From: Ranitomeya imitator
Lineage: Eukaryota
NCBI RefSeq assembly: GCF_032444005.1
Contig: NC_091287.1
Coordinates: 504,494,001 to 504,558,000 of the forward strand
Length of the DNA stretch: 64,000 nucleotides
Direction: 5' to 3'
Shown one piece after another: positions 316-51,134 of this stretch. The notes under the pieces are model-generated. The model had not been told where the DNA came from and ran no database searches. It saw only the letters and a program-made list of their open reading frames with translations. Each line of letters opens with the position of its first letter. Position 1 is the first letter of the stretch. A program made the position numbers and the translations under genes.

Positions 316-1320
316 CTTTCCTCCATCCTTGTCTCCCTCTTCTTTTTCCTTTCTTCTTTGCATCCTATTGTATTTCTTTCCTTCCGTCTACCCTTTTCCC
401 TACTCTGTCTCACTTCATCTCTTCCTTCTCCTCGTAGTTTTCCTTCCTTCCTTCCTTCCTACTCTCTGTCCTTCCTTGCTTTCATCCTTCTTCTCCCTGC
501 CTCATTCACTTTCCTCTTTCATCCTTACCCCTTCCTTCCCTCCATCTTTTCCTTCCTTCCTTCCTTCCTTCCTTCCTTCCTTCCTTCCTTCCTTCCTTCC
601 TTCCATCCTTCCTTCTCTCTGTCCTTTCTTCCTTCTTCTCCCTGCCTCATTCACTTTCCTCTTTCATCCTTACCCCTTCCTTCCCTCCATCTTTTCCTTC
701 CTTCCTTCCTTCCTTCCTTCCTTCCTTCCTTCCTTCCTTCCTTCCTTCCTTCCATCCTTCCTTCTCTCTGTCCTTTCTTCCTTCTTCTCCCTGCCTCATT
801 CACTTTCCTCTTTCATCCTTACCCCTTCCTTCCCTCCATCTTTTCCTTCCTTCCTTCCTTCCTTCCTTCCATCCTTCCTTCTCTCTGTCCTTTCTTCCTT
901 CTTCTCCCTGCTTCACTCACTTTCCTTTTTCATCCTTACCCCTTCCTTCCCTCAAACTCTTCCTTTCCTCCATCTTTTGCTTCCTTCCTTCCTTTCTTCC
1001 CTCTTCCCTTCCTTTCTTACTTACTCCCTTTCTTCCTCTCCCTGCCTCACTCACTTTCCTCTTTTATCCTTATCTATTCCTTCCCTCCATCTTTTCATTC
1101 CTTTTTTCCTTCTCACATTTCCTATCATTCTTTCCTCAATTCTTTTCTTACCCATTTTCCTAACCTTTTTAAAAAAATTTCTTTTCCATTATTTTTTTTT
1201 TATTTCCTTCATTCCTTACATCCTTCTTTCCCTACTTCCTTTCTTCCTTTTTCATTCTCCCTTCACTCCCTACTTTCTTCGCATCCTTGCCTTCTTTTAT
1301 TATACCTTCCCTCCTTTACA
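316..1320. repeat. Polypyrimidine (TTCC)n low-complexity tract with internal duplicated blocks
   Basis: Almost purine-free top strand; pure TTCC runs alternate with a recurring block cttctccctgcctcattcactttcctctttcatccttacccc (near 490, 635, 785, 900, 1035). Confidence 0.95.
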
Positions 1321-1799
1321 TTATTAGAACACACAGAAATTATGAGATGCATCAGAATAAATGATGACTTGGAGGAGATCACAATCCGTATTCAGCGGAT
1401 TAGCTACAACCCCAGTATTACATAGGGGCATCCACATCGTGGTGCATTGGCTTGTTGGGGGCAGCATTTCCAAACATTTTCTTTTTAATTGCAGCCATTG
1501 ATCAGAGCTTCCATTACCTGAAATACCTGATTGACACTTGCATTTCCATTATTATAGTTTTTTTTCGCATTCATTATAATAGCTAGAATCCATGGTTAGA
1601 ACATAGCATTCAGCTAATCTTTTGACATTTGGAAGATCAGCCTGTGCTCAATAGCTAATTAATGGCTTGAGTCTGCATAATAAAATGTCGATATATACCG
1701 TTTGTTGCTGTGTAAACCTGTTTTTATAATTACGGTTGGAAATTCTGTGTTGGATATAAACTTACTTCAACGTGTAATGAAGTAGTGAGTATTCTAAGG

Positions 1800-4500
1800 T
1801 TCTCTGGTGCTACGAAATTCATGGGGATCTCTGGGACTATGGAATTCATGGGGATCTCTGGGACTATGGAATTCATGGGGATCTCTGGGAATAAGGAATT
1901 CATGGGGTTCTCTGGGAATACTCAATTCATGGTGTTCTCTGTGACTATGGAATTCATGAGGTTCTCTGGGACTATGGAAAACATGGGATTCTCTGGGACT
2001 ATGGAATTCATGGGGTTTTCTGGGATTATGGAATTCATGGAGTTCTCTGGGAATATGGAATTTATGGGGATCTCTGGGAATACGGAATTCATGGGGACCT
2101 CTACAACTATGGAATTCATGGGATTCTCTGGGAATACAGAATTCATGGGATTCTCTGGGAATACAGATTTCATGGGGTTCGCTAGAACTATGGAATTCAT
2201 GGGGTTCTCTGGAACTATGGAATTCATGGGGTTCTCTGGAATAATGGAATTCATGGGGTTCTCTGGAACTATGGAATTCATTGGGTTCTCTGGGATTATG
2301 GAATTCATGGGGTTTTTGAGTCTATGGAATTCACAGGGTTCTGTGGAACTATGGAATTCATGAGGTTCTCTGGGACTATGGAATTCATGGGGACCTCTGC
2401 GACTATGGAATTCATGGGATTCTTTGGGAATACGGAATTCATGGGGTTCTCTGGGACTATGGAATTCATGGGGTTCTCTGGGACTATGGAATTCATGGGG
2501 ACCTCTGCGACTATGGAATTCATGGGATTCTTTGGGAATACGGAATTCATGGGGTTCTCTGGGACTATGGAATTCATGGGGTTCTCTGGGACTATGGAAT
2601 TCATGGGGTTCTCTGGGACTATGGAATTCATGGGGTTCTATTGGTCTATGGAATTCATGGGGTTCTCTGTGACTATGGAATTCATGAGGTTCTCTGGGAC
2701 TATGGAAAACATGGGGTTCTCTGGGACTATGGAATTCATGAGGTTCTCTGGGACTATGGAACATGGGGTTCTCTGGGACTATGGAATTCATGGGGTTCTG
2801 TGGAACTATGGAATTCATGAGGTTCTCTGGGACTATGGAATGCATGGGGATCTATGGGAATACGGAATTCATGGGGTTCTCTGGGACTATGGAATTCATG
2901 GGGTTCTGTGGAACTATGGAATTCATGAGGTTCTCTGGGACTATGGAATTCATGGAGTTCTCTGGGTCTATGGAATTCATGGGGTTCTCTGGGACTATGG
3001 AATTCATGGGGATCTCTGGGAATATGGAATTCATGGGGTTCTCTGGGTCTATGGAATTCATGGGGTTCTCTGGGACTATGGAATTCATGGGGATCTCTGG
3101 GAATAAGGAATTCATGGGGTTCTCTGGGAATACTTAATTCATGGTGTTCTCTGTGACTATAGAATTCATGAGGTTCTCTGGGACTATGGAAAACATGGGA
3201 TTCTCTGGGACTATGGAATTCATGGGGTTCTCTGGGATTATGGAATTCATGGAGTTCTCTGGGACTATGGAATTCATGGGGATCTCTGGGAATACGGAAT
3301 TCATGGGGACCTCTACGACTATGGAATTCATGGGATTCTCTGGGAATACAGAATTCATGTGATTCTCTGGTAATACAGAATTCATGGGGTTCGCTGGAAC
3401 TATGGAATTTATGGGGTTCTCTGGAACTATGGAATTCATGGGGTTCTCTGGAATAATGGAATTCATGGGGTTCTCTGGAACTATGGAATTCATTGGGTTC
3501 TCTGGGATTATGGAATTCATGGGGTTTTTGAGTCTATGGAATTCACAGGGTTCTGTGGAACTATGGAATTCATGAGGTTCTCTGGGACTATGGAATTCAT
3601 GGGGACCTCTGCGACTATGGAATTCATGGGGTTCTCTGGGACTATGGAATTCATGAGGTTCTCTGGGACTATGGAATTCATGGGGTTCTCTGGGACTATG
3701 GAATTCATGGGGTTCTCTGGGACTATGGAATTCATGGGGTTCTCTGGGTCTATGGAATTCATGGGGATCTCTGGGAATATGGAATTCATGGGGTTCTCTG
3801 GGAATACTCAATTCATGGTGTTCTCTGTGACTATGGAATTCATGAGGTTCTCTGGGACTATGGAAAACATGGGGTTCTCTGGGACTATGGAATTCATGTG
3901 GACCTCTACGACTATGGAATTCATGGGATTCTCTGGGAATACGGATTTCAGGGGGTTCTCTGGAACTATGGAATTCATGGGGTTCTCTGGGACTATGGAA
4001 TTCATGGGGTTCTCTGCGACTATGGAATTCATGGGGTTCTCTGGGACTATGGAATTCATGAGGTTCTCTGGGACTATGGAATTCATGGGAGCTCTACAAC
4101 TATAGGGATTCTCTGGGAATACAGAATTCATGGGGTTCTCTAGGAATACAAAATTCATAAGGTTCTCTGGAATAATGGAATTCATGGGGTTTTCTGGAAT
4201 AATGGAATTCATGGGGTTCGCTGGAACTATGGAATTCATGGGACTCTCTGAAACTATGGAATTCATTAGGTTCTTTGAGTCTATGGAATTCACGGGGTTC
4301 TCTGGAACTATGGGGTTCTCTGGGACTATGGAATTTATGGGGTTCTTTGAGTCTATGGAATTCACGGGGTTCTCTGGGACTATAGAATTTATGGGGTTCT
4401 CTGAGACTATGGAATTCATGGGGTTCTCTGGGACTATGGAATTCATGGGGACCTCTGTGACTATGGAATTTGTGGGGTTCTCTGAGATGTCTGGATTCAT
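1800..4500. repeat. 27-bp minisatellite (GGAATTCATGGGGTTCTCTGGGACTAT)n
   Basis: About 100 diverged tandem copies, each with an EcoRI site; explains the MEFMGFSGT / NSIVPENPM pseudo-ORFs. Confidence 0.98.
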
Positions 4501-41253: not shown

Positions 41254-41396
41254 ATGCAGTTCGACACTCTCCGCCAGTTCTGCAACACCGTCCTGTCTCA
41301 TTTTCACGAGGCTTTCCCCACTCCCCCCAACATCCTCCAGACTCCCCCCAACATCCTCCAGAACGACCTGTTCGGCCAGACCCTGAACAACTCCAG
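41254..41396 (+). CDS. rims2: First coding exon of RIM2-beta (regulating synaptic membrane exocytosis 2, beta isoform)
   Basis: 47 codons + AG, then donor CAG|GTATGT (phase 2); in-frame upstream stop at 41209; A at -3. Without the 7-aa duplication the peptide matches 32/41 residues of the human RIM2-beta N-terminus as I recall it (MQFETLRQVCNSVLSHFHGVFSSPPNILQNELFGQTLNNAR). The identification is from memory and needs BLAST. Confidence 0.8.
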
Positions 41397-44103: not shown

Positions 44104-46260
44104 AATATTGTACAGTTTCACCTGTCTTTCACTAGGGGGACTTGTCAGGGAGTCACAAAAACACTGAACTTTAGGAAGGCAAAGTTTGACCAGCTTAGAG
44201 ATGCCCTTAATCTGGTAGACTGGGACAATATCCTCAGAAATGAGAATACAGATAATAAATGGGAAATGTTTAAGAACATCCTAAATAGGCAGTGTAAGCG
44301 GTTTATACCTTGTGGGAATAAAAGGACTAGAAATAGGAAAAACCCAATGTGGCTAAACAAAGAAGTAAGACAGGCAATTAACAGTAAAAAGAAAGCATTT
44401 GCACTACTAAAGCAGGATGGCACCATTGAAGCTCTAAAAAACTATAGGGAGAAAAATACTTTATCTAAAAAACTAATTAAAGCTGCCAAAAAGGAAACAG
44501 AGAAGCACATTGCTAAGGAGAGTAAAACTGATCCCAAACTGTTCTTCAACTATATCAATAGTAAAAGAATAAAAACTGAAAATGTAGGCCCCTTAAAAAA
44601 TAGTGAGGAAAGAATGGTTGTAGATGACGAGGAAAAAGCTAACATATTAAACACCGTCTTCTCCACGGTTTTCACGGAAAATGAAATGCTAGGTGAAATC
44701 CCAAGAAACAATGAAAACCCTATATTAAGGGTCACCAATCTAACCCAAGAAGAGGTGCGAAACCGGCTAAATAAGATTAAAATAGATAAATCTCCGGGTC
44801 CGGATGGCATACACCCACGAGTACTAAGAGAACTAAGTAATATAATAGATAAACCATTATTTCTTATTTTTAGTGACTCTATAGCGACAGGGTCTGTTCC
44901 GCAGGACTGGCGCATAGCAAATGTGGTGCCAATATTCAAAAAGGGCTCTAAAAGTGAACCTGGAAATTATAGGCCAGTAAGTCTAACCTCTATTGTTGGT
45001 AAAATATTTGAAGGGTTTCTGAGGGATGTTATTCTGGATTATCTCAATGAGAATAACTGTTTAACTCCATATCAGCATGGGTTTATGAGAAATCGCTCCT
45101 GTCAAACCAATCTAATCAGTTTTTATGAAGAGGTAAGCTATAGGCTGGACCACGGTGAGTCAGTGGACGTGGTATATCTCGATTTATCCAAAGCGTTTGA
45201 TACCGTGCCGCACAAGAGGTTGGTACACAAAATGAGAATGCTTGGTCTGGGGGAAAATGTGTGTAAATGGGTTAGTAACTGGCTTAGTGATAGAAAGCAG
45301 AGGGTGGTTATAAATGGTATAGTCTCTAACTGGGTCGCTGTGACCAGTGGGGTACCGCAGGGGTCAGTATTGGGACCTGTTCTCTTCAACATATTCATTA
45401 ATGATCTGGTAGAAGGTTTACACAGTAAAATATCGATATTTGCAGATGATACAAAACTATGTAAAGCAGTTAATACAAGAGAAGATAGTATTCTGCTACA
45501 GATGGATCTGGATAAGTTGGAAACTTGGGCTGAAAGGTGGCAGATGAGGTTTAACAATGATAAATGTAAGGTTATACACATGGGAAGAAGGAATCAATAT
45601 CACCATTACACACTGAACGGGAAACCACTGGGTAAATCTGACAGGGAGAAGGACTTGGGGATCCTAGTTAATGATAAACTTACCTGGAGCAGCCAGTGCC
45701 AGGCAGCAGCTGCCAAGGCAAACAGGATCATGGGGTGCATTAAAAGAGGTCTGGATACACATGATGAGAGCATTATACTGCCTCTGTACAAATCCCTAGT
45801 TAGACCGCACATGGAGTACTGTGTCCAGTTTTGGGCACCGGTGCTCAGGAAGGATATAATGGAACTAGAGAGAGTACAAAGGAGGGCAACAAAATTAATA
45901 AAGGGGATGCGAGATCTACAATACCCAGATAGATTAGCGAAATTAGGATTATTTAGTCTAGAAAAAAGACGACTGAGGGGCGATCTAATAACCATGTATA
46001 AGTATATAAGGGGACAATACAAATATCTCGCTGAGGATCTGTTTATACCAAGGAAGGTGACGGGCACAAGGGGGCATTCTTTGCGTCTGGAGGAGAGAAG
46101 GTTTTTCCACCAACGTAGAAGAGGATTCTTTACTGTTAGGGCAGTGAGTATCTGGAATTGCTTGCCTGAGGAGGTGGTGATGGCGAACTCAGTCGAGGGG
46201 TTCAAGAGAGGCCTGGATGTCTTCCTGGAGCAGAACAATATTGTATCATACAATTATTAG
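44104..46260 (+). CDS. CR1 ORF2 reverse transcriptase (N-terminally truncated, uninterrupted)
   Basis: RT motifs NYRPVSLTS, QHGF, YLDLSKAFDTVPH, SGVPQGSVLGP, IFADD; frame open upstream of the M at 44266 back to 44104. Confidence 0.93.
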   Translation, partial: NIVQFHLSFTRGTCQGVTKTLNFRKAKFDQLRDALNLVDWDNILRNENTDNKWEMFKNILNRQCKRFIPCGNKRTRNRKNPMWLNKEVRQAINSKKKAFALLKQDGTIEALKNYREKNTLSKKLIKAAKKETEKHIAKESKTDPKLFFNYINSKRIKTENVGPLKNSEERMVVDDEEKANILNTVFSTVFTENEMLGEIPRNNENPILRVTNLTQEEVRNRLNKIKIDKSPGPDGIHPRVLRELSNIIDKPLFLIFSDSIATGSVPQDWRIANVVPIFKKGSKSEPGNYRPVSLTSIVGKIFEGFLRDVILDYLNENNCLTPYQHGFMRNRSCQTNLISFYEEVSYRLDHGESVDVVYLDLSKAFDTVPHKRLVHKMRMLGLGENVCKWVSNWLSDRKQRVVINGIVSNWVAVTSGVPQGSVLGPVLFNIFINDLVEGLHSKISIFADDTKLCKAVNTREDSILLQMDLDKLETWAERWQMRFNNDKCKVIHMGRRNQYHHYTLNGKPLGKSDREKDLGILVNDKLTWSSQCQAAAAKANRIMGCIKRGLDTHDESIILPLYKSLVRPHMEYCVQFWAPVLRKDIMELERVQRRATKLIKGMRDLQYPDRLAKLGLFSLEKRRLRGDLITMYKYIRGQYKYLAEDLFIPRKVTGTRGHSLRLEERRFFHQRRRGFFTVRAVSIWNCLPEEVVMANSVEGFKRGLDVFLEQNNIVSYNY

Positions 46261-46366
46261 GTTCTGTAGAAGGACGTAGATCTGGGGATTTATTATGATG
46301 GAATATAGGCTGAACTGGATGGACAAATGTCTTTTTTCGGCCTTACTAACTATGTTACTATGTTAC
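44104..46366 (+). mobile_element. Young 5'-truncated CR1-clade LINE
   Basis: Open ORF2 from the endonuclease end (NIVQFHLSF) to the stop at 46260; 3' UTR and (TATGTTAC)n tail; splits the 29-bp array. Confidence 0.95.
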
Positions 46367-47467
46367 ATTACTGATCATCCCCATAGAAGCTGCCATTACT
46401 GATCATCCCCCATAGAATCTGCCATTACCGATCATCCTCTATAGAGGCTGCCATTACGATCATCCTCTATAGAGGCTGCCATTACCGATCATCCCCTATA
46501 GAGGTTGCCATTACCGATCATCCCCTATAGAGGCTGCCATTACCGATCATCCCCTATAGAGGCTGCCATTACCAATCATCCCCTATATAGGCTGCCATTA
46601 CCGATCATCCTCTATAGAGGCTGCCACTACCGATCATCCTCTATAGAGGATGCCATTACCGATCACCCCCTATAGAAGCTGCCATTACTGATCATCCCCC
46701 ATAGAATCTGCCATTACCAATCATCCCCTATAGAAGCTGCCATTACCGATCACCCCCTATAGAGGCAGCCATTACTGATGATTCCCTATAGAGGCTGCCA
46801 TTACCGATCATCCTCTATAGAGGATGCCATTACCGATCATCCTCTATAGAGGCTGCCATTACTGATCATCCCCTATAGAAGCTGCCATTATTGATCATCC
46901 CCTATAGAGGCTGCCATTGCCGATCATCCTCTATAGAGGCTGCCATTACCGACCATCCCCTATAGAGACTGCCATTACTGTTCATCCCCTATAGAAGCTG
47001 CCATTATTGATCATCCCCTATAGAGGCTGCCATTACTGATCGTCCCCTATAGAAGCTGCCATTATTGATCATCCCCTATAGAGGCTGTCATTACTGATCA
47101 TCCCCTATAGAAGCTGCCATTATTGATCATCCCCTATAGAGGCTGCCATTACTGATCGTCCCCTATAGAGGCTGCCATTGCCGATCGTCCCCTATAGAGG
47201 CTGCCATTGCCGATCATCCCCTATAGAGGCTGCCATTACTGTTCATCCCCTGTAGAGGCTGCCATTACCGATCGTCCCCTTATAGAGGCTGCCATTGCCG
47301 ATCATCCCCTATAGAGGCTGCCATTACTGTTCATCCCCTGTAGAGGCTGCCATTACCGATCGTCCCCTATAGAGGCTGCCATTGCTGATCATCCCCTATA
47401 GAGGCCGCCATTGCCGATCATCCCCTATAGAGGCCGCCATTACTGATCGTCCCCTGTAGAGGCTGCC
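46367..47467. repeat. 29-bp minisatellite, right part
   Basis: Same unit resumes in register (gctgcc | attactg) after the CR1 tail. Confidence 0.98.
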
Positions 47468-47783
47468 CCCCGACCTCCGGAGCCCCTGGTGTGGATATCT
47501 GCATAGTACATGACGGAGCCACGTATAACGTCTTAAATATTGCAGATCATAGTGAGGCAAATATAACAGCGATCCGCACCACCAAAGTAAAACTCACTGT
47601 GAACGGTCCGGTAGATGAACCTATGCTGGTCTGCTAGATATCGGGTGCTGTAGCCGAGAAAGCCTTCGAACGTGCATATGAGCAAAAAGAGATGCAGCAG
47701 CACTCACCAATCTTCTGTGCAGGTTACTTTATTAATACATCAACTTCACGGCACGGGGGTGTGTGTCCAAGGTAATGTGAGGG

Positions 47784-47830
47784 CTGAACGACGGCCGTTT
47801 CGCACCTGTCCGGCGCTTCAACGGGTTCAA
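47784..47830 (-). ncRNA. Minimal type I hammerhead ribozyme motif (variant core), left arm
   Basis: Exact reverse complement of the 48852-48898 motif. Confidence 0.75.
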
Positions 47831-48851
47831 TGTGTGGACGGACGTGACGCCTTAAGAGGAGTGCTCGAACCCCGCACCCTCCTCCGGCTACACTCCGCCC
47901 ACTCACAGTACAAACTATTAAAATCACAATAAAACATACAATTAAAAATAAATGATAGTACGACAAAGTACACATTAGCAAACAATTGTTTGTATGTCGG
48001 CCACTAACAAATAGCGAAGAATATTCCATATCTTTGTGCCTTCTATCTGCATGAGCCGACGTTAAGAAGTAACAGACAATCAACTGAAAATCCCTGTATC
48101 GCAGAGAGAATATTTATGTGGAATATATGTGTCTGATTGGTTACAATCTCTCTATCCACCTATAGTGCCAAGGGGCACAAGGGGCATCACCTGTCTACGT
48201 CTGTGTGTCAGTGCCAAATAGGACGTAGGTACTCAGATGTATGAACCCAACTTATTATGCATTACATATACAACTATGAAGGGCCAAATTGTTTCTTGAT
48301 GGGACTCCATAAATCTCATAAAAAAATAGATCTAACGAAAAAGTAGACATGTCTATTTTTTTATGAGATTTATGGAGTCCCGTCAAGAAACAATTTGGCC
48401 CTTCATAGTTGTATATGTAATGCATAATAAGTTGGGTTCATACATCTGAGTACCTAAGTCCTATTTGGCACTGACACACAGACGTAGACAGGTGATGCCC
48501 CTTGTGCCCCTTGGCACTATAGGTGGATAGAGAGATTGTAACCAATCAGACACATATATTCCACCTAAATATTCTCTCTGCGATACAGGGATTTTCAGTT
48601 GATTGTCTGTTACTTCTTAACGTCGGCTCATGCAGATAGAAGGCACAAAGATATGGAATATTCTTCGCTATTTGTTAGTGGCCGACATACAAACAATTGT
48701 TTGCTAATGTGTACTTTGTCGTACTATCATTTGTTTTTAATTGTATGTTTCATTGTGATTTTAATAGTTTGTACTGTGAGTGGGCGGAGTGTAGCCGGAG
48801 GAGGGTGCGGGGTTCGAGCACTCCTCTTAAGGTGTCACGTCCGTCCACACA

Positions 48852-48898
48852 TTGAACCCGTTGAAGCGCCGGACAGGTGCGAAACGGCCGTCGTTCAG
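48852..48898 (+). ncRNA. Minimal type I hammerhead ribozyme motif (variant core), right arm
   Basis: UUGAAC-CCGUUGA-A-GCGCC-GGACA-GGUGC-GAAAC-GGCC-GUC^GUUCAG: stem I, 5-bp stem II, GAAA, palindromic stem III ACGGCCGU, GUC site (cleavage after 48892). Confidence 0.75.
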
Positions 48899-50095
48899 CC
48901 CTCACATTACCTTGGACACACCCCCCCCGTGCCATGAAGTTGATGTATAAATAAAGTAACCTGCACAGAAGATTGGTGAGTGCTGCCGTATCTCTTTTTG
49001 CTCTTAAATTTTGCAGAGGCTTTTATACTTTTATGGTAGGTGGGGCGACATATAACGTAAGACCCCCTCCCCCTCCGATATCTATTTCTTGGTATGGTTT
49101 CCTAGCGAAAAAGGTTAGTTGTGAATTCTCACCTGTCTGGCTGAGCACCCATTCACCAATTCCACGGACCCCCACCACCACCAATACACATGATCGGTTC
49201 TGACACGTGTGACCAGTGGGGACGGTGTAGTAAGCCATTGTCGGACACCTGTCACGGCGGCTTATCTCTTGTGGGAATAAAAGGATATGTTTAAATCGAA
49301 CTTGTCTGATCCCTTCTTCCCCCTCCCCCACAATATCATCTGTCAGGGAGGACACCAATCTAATGAGTATGTGGGCCACAAGATAAATCGCTGGTCTTTG
49401 AGCTTAATAGATGGGTGATTTTTATTTGCCCTGGTGGGCTGGGGGAGTGCATGGTTAATTGGGGCTCCTAAGCTGGAGAGCCACCACCTAAAGCTGATTG
49501 ATCGCTGACTTTTGCTCTAGATTTGATTTTTTCCCTAGATTTTTTTAGAACAATATCAAAAACCTATTAGAATCCAAGTAAAGTACCGTAAGTGGTAGTG
49601 ACGTGGAAATGCTGGCGTCCGGCCAGCAGAGAGGGATCGGATGGTGAAGGTTACCTCTGCGCCCACGCGGCCTGCTTTATTACCTGTCCTCTCAGTGTGG
49701 GACACTCACATTTATCCACAGAGCGCTGCTGCTGCAGAACTGCTCGCATGTCTTACATTGTCCCAACATCTCCGCTGTTTTCATAAGCAGCATTGATTGT
49801 GAAATGTTTGGGGTTTTTTTTTGCCTTTAAAGTGTCCGTTCCACAAGGGGATTGTAAGATGGAAATGGATATCCTATAATGTGGAGAGTAACACGTCGCC
49901 CCGAGCGGGGTCTTCATCTACCAAGGCACAAGGGACGAATAACGAGACAGATCCTCTAACGCAGAGTCTTGGCTAGGCTTCTCTTCACATGGGGGCACAT
50001 TTAGGACCCTGGCAATGCAGAGTGGCTTTTTGGACCAGCTCCATTAATCAGCTCCCATACTCCATCAGTCCCCCCGGGAATGCCCCTGTATTGGG

Positions 50096-51134
50096 CAGGG
50101 GTGGGCAATTAATTTTCCCAAGGGGCCACATGAGAGACCTTGACTGTTGTGGAGGGCCGAACCAATAATTCTGTTTAATATTAATTATAATCATTATTTT
50201 ATATGAATGTTAATTGTATCCCTTAATATTGAGCAAAATTAAGTATGCCGACACCCCCTATATACTGTATGAGCCCACACACAGCCCCAATATATATGTA
50301 TAGTAGGAGACCCCACATAACCCCTACATAAAGTATGAGCCCCCTATGTACAGTATGAGCCCAACAGAGCCCCCTTACATACAGTTTGAGCCCCCTATAT
50401 ACAGTACGAGACCCCACATATTCCCCTTAAATGCAGTATTAGCCCCCTACATTCTGTATGAGCCCCCTACATACAGTATAAGCTCCCACATAGCCCCCTA
50501 CATACAGTATAATCCCAACATAGCCCCTCTATATAAAGTATGAACCCCTTAATACAGTATGAGCCTCCACACAGCCCCCTATATACATCATGAGCCCCAA
50601 CACAGCCCCCTTACATACAGGTTGAGCCCCCACACAGTCCCCTGTATACAGTATGGGACCCCACATATTCCCCCTAAATACAGTATAAACCCCCACATAG
50701 CCATCTATATACAGTATGACCCCCAACACAGCCCCCTTACATACATTACGATCTCTCACACAGTACCCCTATATACAGCATAAGCCCCCACACAGTACCC
50801 TTATATACAGTGTGAGCCCCAAATAAACCCCTATATACAGTGAGACCCCAGAAAACATCCCATACCTGTCTCCCGTTCCCCTGGCGCTCTGCCCCGGTCT
50901 CCGGTGCACACAGGCGTGATGTAGTGACGGGATAGTGTCTCAGTTGCACACACTGATTGGTGGGAGGATGTTTTATAGCGGTGGTACCTCGACACGAGAT
51001 GTGGGTGGGAGAGGGCATGGTGCGGTCAGTCGGGCACTGTTTTTAGCCCATTAGGTGTCTCCGTTTGTGGACCGGTTTGGAACAGTAAGAGGGCCGGATG
51101 TGGCCCGTGGGCCGCACTTTCTCCAGATCTCCTG
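50096..51134. mobile_element. hAT-like non-autonomous element with internal degenerate tandem repeat (50250-50850)
   Basis: CAGGGGTGGGCAA start; ggcccgtgggccgcacttt subterminal end; 8-bp TSD not confirmed. Confidence 0.5.

What the first reader, a model, noticed from the sequence alone, without database searches (positions are those of the whole stretch)
47531..49017. Penelope-like fold-back insertion with twin hammerhead ribozymes in the RIM2-beta first intron
Seen: a 16-bp TSD brackets a 1.45-kb insert whose core is a near-perfect inverted repeat (two ~650-bp arms, 21-bp spacer), each arm carrying a hammerhead fold, AATAAA and a GGTGAGT donor. Established: Penelope-like elements have pseudo-LTRs, often leave inverted copies, and encode minimal type I hammerheads thought to act as dimers. 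Inference: a recent, ORF-less PLE insertion placing one ribozyme sense and one antisense to a synaptic gene pre-mRNA.
Basis: partly seen in the sequence, partly recalled or inferred. Interest (0 to 1): 0.8.

Follow-up and report, generated by a model that had tools for sequence, protein, structure and literature searches.

The report
Penelope-type fold-back insertion, degenerate hammerheads
A 1.45-kb protein-free jumping-gene fragment of the Penelope type landed head-to-head in an intron of a poison-frog synaptic gene after the split from a sister species; it is a clean but ordinary example, and its two "ribozymes" have an altered core and probably do not cut.

Summary
A 1455-bp insert (47547-49001) sits between 16-bp direct repeats that match at 15 of 16 positions. 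It consists of two inverted copies that overlap over 649 nt and differ by 11 substitutions and 1 indel. A contig from a sister species runs straight from 47547 to 49019, so that species has the empty site with one copy of the target. This is therefore a real, lineage-specific insertion with a true target-site duplication.

Each arm carries a motif with the architecture of a Penelope minimal hammerhead: helices I to III, an extra base before G10.1, a G10.1-C11.1 pair and a palindromic helix III. The catalytic box reads CCGUUGA instead of CUGANGA (U4C and A6U). Rfam finds no hammerhead, and the lowest-energy monomer fold pairs the core shut. The two motifs lie on opposite strands, so they cannot form a hammerhead dimer. 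Any transcript that spans the insert folds into a roughly 650-bp hairpin.

Only the motif-bearing outer 200 bp or so of each arm is high-copy, in two species. The inner part is unique to this locus. Each arm has a private end: 130 nt at one 3' end and 21 nt at the other 5' end. This fits two separate cDNAs, as expected from the dual-strand priming described for Penelope-like elements (PLEs).

The insert has no ORF, and I could not make a direct link to an RT/GIY-YIG element. The kind is known, and this scan has noted it many times in this genome. Interest is low to moderate.

The parts
47531..47546 (.). Left copy of the 16-bp target-site duplication (AT-rich, TCTTAAATATTGCAGA)
   Evidence: 15/16 identical to 49002-49017. 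The sister-species contig has one copy and no insert (X25 record 9).
47547..48330 (-). Left element copy, 784 nt, sense on the minus strand (5' end at the centre, 3' end at 47547)
   Evidence: Inverted-repeat arm. Orientation is set by the hammerhead-like motif. An X3 paralog contig is collinear with 47549-47874.
47547..47676 (-). 130-nt 3' extension ('tail') present only on the left copy. Its last 56 nt form a 10-bp-stem hairpin that ends at the insertion boundary.
   Evidence: No mirror in the right arm. Contiguous with the arm in the X3 paralog. Moderate copy depth, 83 against 8.4. Hairpin seen in the fold.
48331..49001 (+). Right element copy, 671 nt, sense on the plus strand. It ends 109 nt after the predicted hammerhead C17.
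   Evidence: The right junction is spanned by a mismatch-free 1155-nt contig from the likely source sample (X2 record 5, 48968-50122).
48331..48351 (+).
   Evidence: The X3 contig aligns across 48333-48415 with 2 mismatches in 83, so it is continuous through the spacer into the right arm.
48852..48898 (+). Hammerhead-like motif, right copy. Helix I UUGAAC/GUUCAG; core CCGUUGA plus an extra A; helix II GCGCC-GGACA-GGUGC; GAAA; palindromic helix III ACGGCCGU; C17 at 48892.
   Evidence: Descriptor scan. No Rfam hit. MFE is a rod, not a junction. Highest copy depth of the insert.
47784..47830 (-). Hammerhead-like motif, left copy, identical in sequence to the right one
48946..48981 (+). TATAAATAAAG (TATA-like box / AATAAA) followed 22 nt later by GGTGAGT. 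Mirror signals lie at 47702-47733 on the minus strand. A CCAAT (48542) and a GGGCGG (48782) lie upstream.
   Evidence: Motif positions. Reading them as a promoter, poly(A) signal or splice donor is inference only.
48416..48807 (+). 392-nt inner block (mirror 47875-48266), present in both arms but absent from the X3 paralog and not repeated elsewhere in the laid contigs
   Evidence: Depth 16.4, about 2 x the single-copy 8.37, in X2. Zero depth in sister species X25. The X3 contig joins 47874 to the equivalent of 48267.
49002..49017 (.). Right copy of the target-site duplication

Best explanation
This is a non-coding retro-insertion made by Penelope-like-element (PLE) machinery. The template RNA consisted of pseudo-LTR-type sequence: promoter-like boxes, a minimal-hammerhead-shaped motif, and about 110-240 nt downstream of it. 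It was copied into an AT-rich intronic target in this poison-frog lineage after the split from a sister species. Two cDNAs were made, one primed from each nicked target strand 16 bp apart. They started at two different internal sites on the RNA, 130 nt apart. Both ran 5'-ward and stopped 21 nt from each other, and they were joined head-to-head. The result is a 1455-bp fold-back flanked by a 16-bp duplication. The hammerhead-shaped motif is a relic or variant of the PLE minimal hammerhead with U4C and A6U in the catalytic box. Here it is most likely catalytically weak or dead. In a host pre-mRNA that spans both arms it is buried in a roughly 650-bp perfect-ish RNA duplex. Shown: the insertion, the TSD, the empty site, the two-copy anatomy, the private ends, the non-canonical core, the copy-number profile and the absence of an ORF. 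Inferred: the PLE enzyme as the agent, dual-strand priming, and inactivity of the motif.
For: The empty site in sister species has one target copy and the skip is exactly 1455+16 bp (X25 record 9). IR anatomy and 1.7% arm divergence. Each arm has a private terminal extension that a paralog contig shows to be family sequence (X3 record 15), so neither arm can be a copy of the other. No poly(A), no ORF or Pfam domain, and no tRNA-like part. The motif meets the non-descriptor traits listed for PLE min-HHRs: a base between positions 9 and 10.1, a G10.1-C11.1 pair, and palindromic 15.2-16.2 plus loop 3 (PMC4209133; 0 chance hits in 150 simulated windows). The motif region has the highest repeat depth (up to about 5400 against 8.4 single-copy) in this species and the sister species, with loop-length variants confined to loop II. 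Published PLE hallmarks: an inverted 5'-truncated copy and a tail at one end only (PMC8557442); nicking and extension of both strands, internal RT start sites and an AT-rich ATT target (PMC11167929); dual min-HHRs on opposite strands 100-700 bp apart (PMC4209133). The right copy ends 109 nt past C17, on the same scale as the 85-92 nt in the Anolis element (PMC11167929).
Against: No RT/GIY-YIG ORF is in or beside the insert, and no sequence link to an autonomous PLE could be made with the tools. The only support for such a link is unchecked scan notes. The one-sided extension is 130 nt, not the published 30-40 nt. The catalytic box fails the hammerhead consensus at two conserved positions, and Rfam is silent. 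The inner 450 nt or so of each arm is not repeated in the laid contigs, so the template may have been a chimeric or rare variant RNA. Contigs cannot prove the central junction in long molecules.
Confidence: 0.75

Rival explanations
1. One reading: two functional hammerhead ribozymes, one sense and one antisense to the host pre-mRNA, able to self-cleave (as dimers) and so to cut the synaptic gene's transcript.
For: The hammerhead architecture is far above chance. The motif region is the most conserved, highest-copy part of the insert. A U4C core variant supports viroid infectivity despite low in-vitro activity (PMC3088659). The Anolis PLE hammerhead is protein-assisted (PMC11167929). Unchecked scan notes report the same CCGU[N]GA core in many PLE copies of this genome, which would suggest selection.
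Against: Two conserved U-turn positions are changed. Comprehensive single and double mutagenesis found low activity and no rescue in the CUGA turn apart from the C3-G8 pair swap (PMC9901934), and A6C gives <0.1 per min (PMC3088659). There is no Rfam hit. The monomer MFE pairs the core. Only one motif per transcript is in sense, so no dimer can form. The fold-back duplex of -1285 kcal/mol would sequester it.
Confidence: 0.07
2. One ordinary insertion, followed by or coupled to a hairpin event: snap-back second-strand synthesis on the first cDNA, or a later DNA-level palindromic duplication.
For: The arms meet almost exactly head-to-head, and the centre is a small loop-like 21 nt.
Against: The copy that owns the 21-nt centre (right) lacks the 130-nt 3' end, and the copy that owns the 130 nt (left) lacks the 21 nt. 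A paralog shows both extras to be family sequence. A snap-back product cannot contain sequence that its template lacks. A single TSD flanks the whole insert.
Confidence: 0.1
3. A non-PLE element: a fold-back or long-TIR DNA transposon (MITE), a DIRS-like element, or a LINE/SINE with 5' inversion.
For: Long inverted repeats define Foldback and some MITE families. A CR1/L2-like LINE lies 1.3 kb upstream.
Against: A 16-bp TSD is far longer than DNA-transposon TSDs. The two termini are not inverted copies of each other, because the left end has 130 unmirrored nt. There is no poly(A) or microsatellite tail. LINE twin priming gives non-overlapping segments, not a 649-nt overlap. The element shows no similarity to the rest of the window. 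The motif has PLE-specific min-HHR traits.
Confidence: 0.05
4. Assembly artefact: the inversion or the whole palindrome was created by the assembler.
For: PLE tandem/inverted structures are known to trouble assemblies (PMC8557442). No listed contig spans the whole insert.
Against: The arms differ at 12 positions, and artefactual palindromes are normally identical. The right junction is spanned by an exact 1155-nt contig, and the central bins are covered at about twice single-copy depth. The insert length plus the TSD equals exactly what the sister-species contig skips.
Confidence: 0.03

Closest known systems
Penelope-like elements (Poseidon/Neptune-type of vertebrates): 5'-truncated, pLTR-only insertions with an inverted copy
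   Same: Head-to-head 5'-truncated copies, an extension at one end only, a variable-length TSD in AT-rich DNA, no poly(A), a hammerhead-type motif upstream of the 3' end, promoter-like boxes and a splice-donor-like site in the repeat (PMC8557442, PMC11167929, PMC4209133, PMC6765202).
   Different: No RT/GIY-YIG coding sequence and no demonstrated homology to a coding PLE. The one-sided extension is 130 nt rather than 30-40 nt. The hammerhead core is non-canonical. The inner 450 nt or so of the arms is locus-unique.
PLE minimal hammerhead ribozymes (min-HHR; Cervera & de la Pena 2014)
   Same: Type I layout, short helix I (6 bp), a 5-bp helix II closed by G10.1-C11.1, a bulged base between A9 and G10.1, an 8-nt palindromic helix III (ACGGCCGU) suited to dimer formation, and a GUC cleavage triplet.
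   Different: The catalytic box is CCGUUGA instead of CUGANGA (U4C, A6U). These changes make the box complementary to AACGG of the GAAAC-GG segment, so the predicted fold is a rod. Activity was not tested.
Animal non-LTR retrozymes (non-autonomous PLE derivatives; PMC7229834, bioRxiv 10.64898/2026.07.22.740005)
   Same: Protein-free, hammerhead-bearing, a few hundred nt long, abundant in amphibians, related to PLE pLTRs and presumably mobilised by PLE enzymes. A 502-nt paralog contig of very high depth exists in a run of unknown kind.
   Different: This copy has no tandem monomers. There is one motif per copy with a non-canonical core, and no evidence of circular RNA.
LINE-1 twin-priming 5' inversions
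   Same: Two cDNAs primed from the two target strands and joined in inverted orientation, with a TSD.
   Different: L1 inversions join non-overlapping parts of one RNA and end in poly(A). Here both copies cover the same 649 nt and there is no poly(A).

Membership tests
Penelope-like element insertion | Single ORF with telomerase-like RT and GIY-YIG endonuclease (autonomous members) | tested here: not met
   No ORF over 119 aa and no Pfam domain in the insert. The nearby RT ORF is a CR1/L2-like LINE. This feature is not required of a truncated or non-autonomous copy.
Penelope-like element insertion | Inverted 5'-truncated copy adjacent to the main copy, forming inverted repeats | tested here: met
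   Two head-to-head copies of 784 and 671 nt with a 649-nt overlap. Feature as described in PMC8557442.
Penelope-like element insertion | 'Tail' extension at one end only, reflecting two internal RT start sites | tested here: inconclusive
   There is a one-sided 3' extension, but it is 130 nt long against the published 30-40 nt (PMC8557442, PMC11167929).
Penelope-like element insertion | Target-site duplication in AT-rich DNA, no poly(A) tail | tested here: met
   16-bp TSD containing TTAAATATT, confirmed by the sister-species empty site. There is no A-run at either 3' end.
Penelope-like element insertion | Sequence homology of the repeat to the pLTR of an RT/EN-coding PLE | not testable with these tools
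   No animal repeat library or genome-wide search was available. Protein-route and metagenome searches found nothing. Only unchecked scan notes claim the same core in full PLEs.
Hammerhead ribozyme (type I, Rfam RF00163 and clan) | Match to the curated covariance models | tested here: not met
   No hammerhead family hit at gathering score or at E<=10. Published min-HHRs also needed a special descriptor, so this carries limited weight.
Hammerhead ribozyme (type I, Rfam RF00163 and clan) | Conserved core C3 U4 G5 A6 N7 G8 A9 ... G12 A13 A14 and A15.1-U16.1, H17 | tested here: not met
   GAAA, A15.1-U16.1 and C17 are present. The 5' box is C C G U U G A, so positions 4 and 6 deviate in both arms.
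Hammerhead ribozyme (type I, Rfam RF00163 and clan) | Three helices around the core | tested here: met
   Helix I 6 bp, helix II 5 bp, helix III 2 bp plus a palindromic loop. There were 0 chance matches in 150 simulated windows. The thermodynamic MFE prefers a rod instead.
Hammerhead ribozyme (type I, Rfam RF00163 and clan) | Self-cleavage at the H17 site | not testable with these tools
   No raw RNA reads were available, and all the runs laid are contigs.
Non-LTR retrozyme | Tandem head-to-tail monomers, each with a hammerhead, giving circular RNA | tested here: not met
   No direct or tandem repeat inside the insert. Circular RNA cannot be tested here.

The most novel reading that the evidence does not exclude
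The CCGU[N]GA box may not be decay. It may be a conserved, functional variant of the PLE hammerhead in dendrobatid frogs. It could be a protein-assisted or conformationally switched ribozyme: rod when alone, junction when bound or dimerised. Alternatively it could be a hammerhead-shaped RNA handle kept for RT recognition rather than cleavage. This intronic fold-back would additionally load the host synaptic-gene pre-mRNA with a roughly 650-bp dsRNA, a substrate for ADAR or Dicer. My data are compatible with conservation: the motif region has the highest copy depth in two species and the indel variants are confined to loop II. They do not show it. The only direct claims are unchecked scan notes.
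Probability: 0.12. Interest if true: 0.6.

Novelty: new member of a known kind. Interest (0 to 1): 0.3.

Why it matters
As a single locus it matters little. Fold-back, hammerhead-bearing, ORF-less PLE or retrozyme insertions are documented in amphibians and were noted repeatedly by this scan in this genome. It has two modest values. First, it is an unusually well-anchored example, with the empty site seen in a sister species. Its two arms each carry a private end, which argues for two independently primed cDNAs. That is the in-vivo footprint expected from the both-strand nicking and internal RT initiation so far shown only in vitro for an Anolis PLE. Second, it belongs to a set of copies with a doubly substituted hammerhead box. 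If that box is conserved family-wide, it would be a natural test of what the PLE hammerhead is for. For the host gene, the practical consequence to check is a long intronic dsRNA hairpin plus a sense-strand AATAAA and a GGTGAGT donor.

Tried and rejected
- **Rfam.** Searches at gathering score and at E<=10 gave only spurious miRNA-precursor hits on the palindrome centre and no hammerhead.
- **Other copies in the window.** blastn of the element against the window found none.
- **Coding or RNA-gene content.** Pfam on all ORFs of the insert gave nothing, and ARAGORN found no tRNA-like part.
- **Neighbouring RT ORF (44266-46260) as the autonomous partner.** Rejected. Its relatives carry an APE-type endonuclease, so it is a CR1/L2-like LINE.
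- **Reaching paralogs through spurious ORF translations.** Two homology searches found no candidates.
- **Metagenome scan.** An exact 21-nt motif gave 0 hits.
- **The 392-nt gap in the X3 paralog as a splice.** Rejected. The borders are not GT-AG on either strand.
- **Snap-back hairpin model.** Rejected, because each arm holds family sequence that the other lacks.
- **Naming the host gene.** An ESM-Atlas look-up and a solved-structure search gave nothing usable.
- **Lunse et al. 2017 (PMC5785218).** Not held in the library.
- **The search of earlier findings by sequence.** Blank.
Full report
**What is in the sequence**

- The repeat finder reports inverted arms 47755-48330/48352-48927 at 99% and 47677-47759/48924-49006 at 94%, with 21 nt between them.
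- A global alignment of the two copies in sense orientation gives a 649-nt overlap with 11 substitutions (7 transitions, 5 at CpG) and one 1-nt indel, or 1.7% divergence.
- The 16-mers at 47531-47546 and 49002-49017 match at 15 of 16 positions.
- The insert between them is 1455 bp (47547-49001).
- It is not symmetric. The left end carries 130 nt (47547-47676) with no counterpart on the right.
- No other copy of any part of the element lies in the 64-kb window.

**Is it a real insertion?**

Yes. I laid Logan contigs of four public runs on 47465-50500.

A 1285-nt contig from a second species (organism B, run X25, record 9) matches 50120 down to 49019. At the very next base it continues with 47547 down to 47465. 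It therefore skips 1471 bp, which equals the 1455-bp insert plus one 16-bp repeat. So the sister species has the empty site with a single target copy.

The flanks of the two species differ at 58 of 1187 aligned bases (4.9%). The arm-to-arm divergence of 1.7% is about a third of that. The insertion is therefore younger than the species split but not brand new.

In the likely source sample (X2), an exact 1155-nt contig spans the right junction (48968-50122). The central bins are covered at about twice single-copy depth (15.5-16.4 against 8.37), as expected for two collapsed arms. Together with the 12 arm differences, this makes an assembly artefact unlikely. Only long reads could close that question fully.

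The best protein matches of a neighbouring LINE ORF are 98% identical to Ranitomeya imitator proteins. Earlier scan notes also call this genome a poison frog.

**Anatomy of the two copies**

A 502-nt contig of very high depth (514) comes from another sample of the same species (X3, kind not on record). It is a paralog, 96% identical.

- It is collinear with 47549-47874. So the unmirrored 130 nt are part of the element, contiguous with the left arm.
- It then jumps to the reverse of 48415-48333, running through 19 nt of the so-called spacer with only 2 mismatches in 83. So the 21-nt 'spacer' is element sequence that belongs to the right copy.

The structure is therefore two copies abutting head-to-head: a left copy of 784 nt on the minus strand (48330 to 47547) and a right copy of 671 nt on the plus strand (48331 to 49001). 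The right copy reaches 21 nt further 5'. The left copy reaches 130 nt further 3'. Neither can be a copy of the other. This rules out a simple snap-back hairpin or a later palindromic duplication and points to two separately made cDNAs.

The same paralog lacks a 392-nt inner block (47875-48266, mirrored at 48416-48807). The borders of that block are not splice sites.

**Copy number along the insert**

| Region | Summed contig depth, this species | Sister species | Third species |
|---|---|---|---|
| Outer ~200 bp of each arm (47669-47872, 48791-48994) | 900-3000, up to ~5400 at helix II of the motif (single-copy = 8.4) | 560-2450 (single-copy = 10.5) | only 50-76 |
| 130-nt tail | 83 | not noted | not noted |
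| Inner 47873-48790 | ~16, i.e. just this locus | none | not noted |

The repeated, conserved module is thus the motif-bearing part. The rest is a rare variant or captured sequence. Indel variants among the other copies fall in loop II of the motif (47809-47812), which leaves the stems intact.

**The 'hammerheads'**

Both arms carry the identical 47-nt motif (48852-48898 plus strand, 47784-47830 minus strand). Read as a type I hammerhead it has:

- helix I UUGAAC/GUUCAG;
- a box CCGUUGA followed by an extra A;
- helix II GCGCC-GGACA-GGUGC, closed by G10.1-C11.1;
- GAAA;
- an 8-nt palindromic helix III, ACGGCCGU;
- GUC, with C17 at 48892.

The extra base before G10.1, the G10.1-C11.1 pair and the palindromic helix III are the traits that Cervera and de la Pena listed as emerging beyond their search descriptor in PLE minimal hammerheads (PMC4209133).

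I wrote a descriptor with these traits that allows up to two mismatches in CUGANGA. It hits only these two sites in the window, on both strands, and nothing in 150 simulated windows of the same dinucleotide content. The descriptor was written after I had seen the motif, which inflates this somewhat. Even so, the resemblance is not chance.

The motif nevertheless fails as a canonical hammerhead.

- Positions 4 and 6 of the U-turn are changed (U4C, A6U).
- Rfam finds no hammerhead at gathering score or at E<=10.
- The lowest-energy fold of the monomer pairs CCGUU with AACGG of the GAAAC-GG segment. This closes the core into a rod. The energy is -19.2 kcal/mol, z = -1.75, and it is the same in both arms.

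Published mutagenesis bears on this:

- All single and double mutants in the CUGA turn have low activity, with no rescue except for the C3-G8 pair swap (PMC9901934).
- A natural A6C variant cleaves at <0.1 per min, and the phosphate after A6 contacts U4 (PMC3088659).
- U4C lowers activity considerably but still supports a viroid in vivo (PMC3088659).
- PLE minimal hammerheads are in any case weak in vitro (PMC4209133).
- In the one reconstituted PLE the hammerhead is protein-assisted and dispensable for insertion (PMC11167929).

I conclude that the motif is a hammerhead derivative that is probably weak or inactive. This is inference; no cleavage data exist.

The idea of the two motifs acting as a dimer does not work geometrically. 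They lie on opposite strands, so any one transcript has one sense motif and its complement. The whole insert is predicted to fold as a roughly 650-bp duplex of -1285 kcal/mol.

**What kind of element, and how it got there**

The insert has no ORF above 119 aa, no Pfam domain, no tRNA-like part, no poly(A) and no internal tandem repeat.

Its layout matches the published PLE signature:

- strong 5' truncation, an inverted 5'-truncated copy next to the main copy, and an extension at one end only (PMC8557442);
- a hammerhead-type motif in the repeat (PMC4209133);
- promoter-like boxes and a donor-like site, namely CCAAT 48542, GGGCGG 48782, TATAAATA 48946 and GGTGAGT 48975, in line with promoters and introns reported in pLTRs (PMC6765202).

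The Anolis Poseidon enzyme nicks and extends both target strands. It prefers AT-rich ATT sites and starts reverse transcription at two internal RNA sites 85-92 nt past the hammerhead cut (PMC11167929). Here:

- the target is TCTTAAATATTGCAGA;
- the right copy ends 109 nt past C17 and the left copy 243 nt past it;
- the right junction shares a 2-nt TC microhomology with the RNA sequence that follows in the longer copy.

The most economical mechanism is dual-strand target-primed reverse transcription from staggered nicks 16 bp apart. The two cDNAs would start at sites 130 nt apart and be joined at their 5' ends.

Two things do not fit neatly. The extension is 130 nt rather than 30-40 nt, and the inner block is locus-unique.

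I could not link the repeat to an RT/GIY-YIG element.

- The only RT ORF nearby (44266-46260) belongs to a CR1/L2-like LINE.
- Routes to paralog sequences failed.
- Unchecked first-reader notes from other windows of this genome report the same CCGUUGA, CCGUAGA or CCGUNGA box in pLTRs of full Penelope copies and in two diverged subfamilies. If that is true, it supplies the missing link and suggests that the variant box, with variation precisely at the free position 7, is conserved. I did not test those notes.

**Host context**

A plus-strand ORF starts at 41254 and runs to a canonical AG|GTATGT donor at 41396/41397. The peptide is conserved. A 200-aa eel protein begins with it and continues into an acidic, arginine-rich stretch. 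From memory I recognise that stretch as the RIM linker; no tool confirmed this.

No further exon of that protein is found in the window. The insert therefore lies about 6.1 kb into what is most likely the following intron, with the right copy in the sense of the gene.

The 'RIM2-beta' label itself is not verified. No RNA run was available, so effects on the transcript are untested.

**Comparison and verdict**

This is a new member of a known kind. It works like, and most likely is, a PLE-mobilised, non-coding pLTR/retrozyme-type insertion. Membership in the hammerhead ribozyme family fails on the core and on Rfam, although the architecture is clearly hammerhead-derived.

The same class has been reported many times by this scan in this genome and in the literature for amphibians (PMC4209133; PMC7229834; bioRxiv 10.64898/2026.07.22.740005).

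Its merits are the proven empty site and the two-private-ends anatomy that supports dual-strand priming. Its open point is whether the doubly substituted box is conserved.

Confidence in the main explanation is 0.75, and interest is 0.3.

Noticed in passing
window 46366-47467: A 29-bp minisatellite with 38 copies at 89% match (TRF score 1649). It starts about 100 bp after the LINE ORF and ends 64 bp before the insertion target. PLE clades are reported to favour repeat-rich or AT-rich targets, but here the insert is beside the array, not in it.
   Followed up: partly
window 44266-46260 (+): An intact 664-aa ORF with an RVT_1 domain (E 6.6e-35). Relatives carry APE-type endonuclease domains (CR1/L2-like LINE). 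The best hits are 98% identical to Ranitomeya imitator proteins, so this is a young LINE copy unrelated to the Penelope-type insert.
   Followed up: yes
window 50095-50500: An extremely high-copy repeat (summed contig depth 10,000-40,000 against about 8-10 single-copy) shared by three frog species, with sharp loose-end boundaries at 50095/50096 and many internal deletion variants.
   Followed up: no
window 41254-41396 (+): The conserved first exon carries the 21-bp in-frame duplication (TPPNILQ twice). The closest database protein (P0001, 98% identical, from a Logan assembly) has the heptapeptide only once, so the duplication is specific to this genome or allele.
   Followed up: partly
window 47549-47874 joined to 48333-48415 (run X3, record 15): A 502-nt paralog contig of depth 514 in a run of unknown kind lacks the 392-nt inner block. 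It extends 59 nt beyond the element's 3' end and 34 nt beyond its 5' end. It could be an abundant transcript or a tandem/circular unit of the parent family (contig length minus k-1 would give about 472 nt).
   Followed up: partly
It shares no blastn similarity with the 47.5-kb element, so it belongs to a different family if it is a PLE at all.
   Followed up: partly
window 47547-47602: The last 56 nt of the longer copy form a hairpin with a 10-bp stem (TCATAGTGAG/CTCACTGTGA) that ends exactly at the insertion boundary. This recalls the stem-loop at the RT start site of the Anolis PLE, though it is not AC-rich.
   Followed up: no
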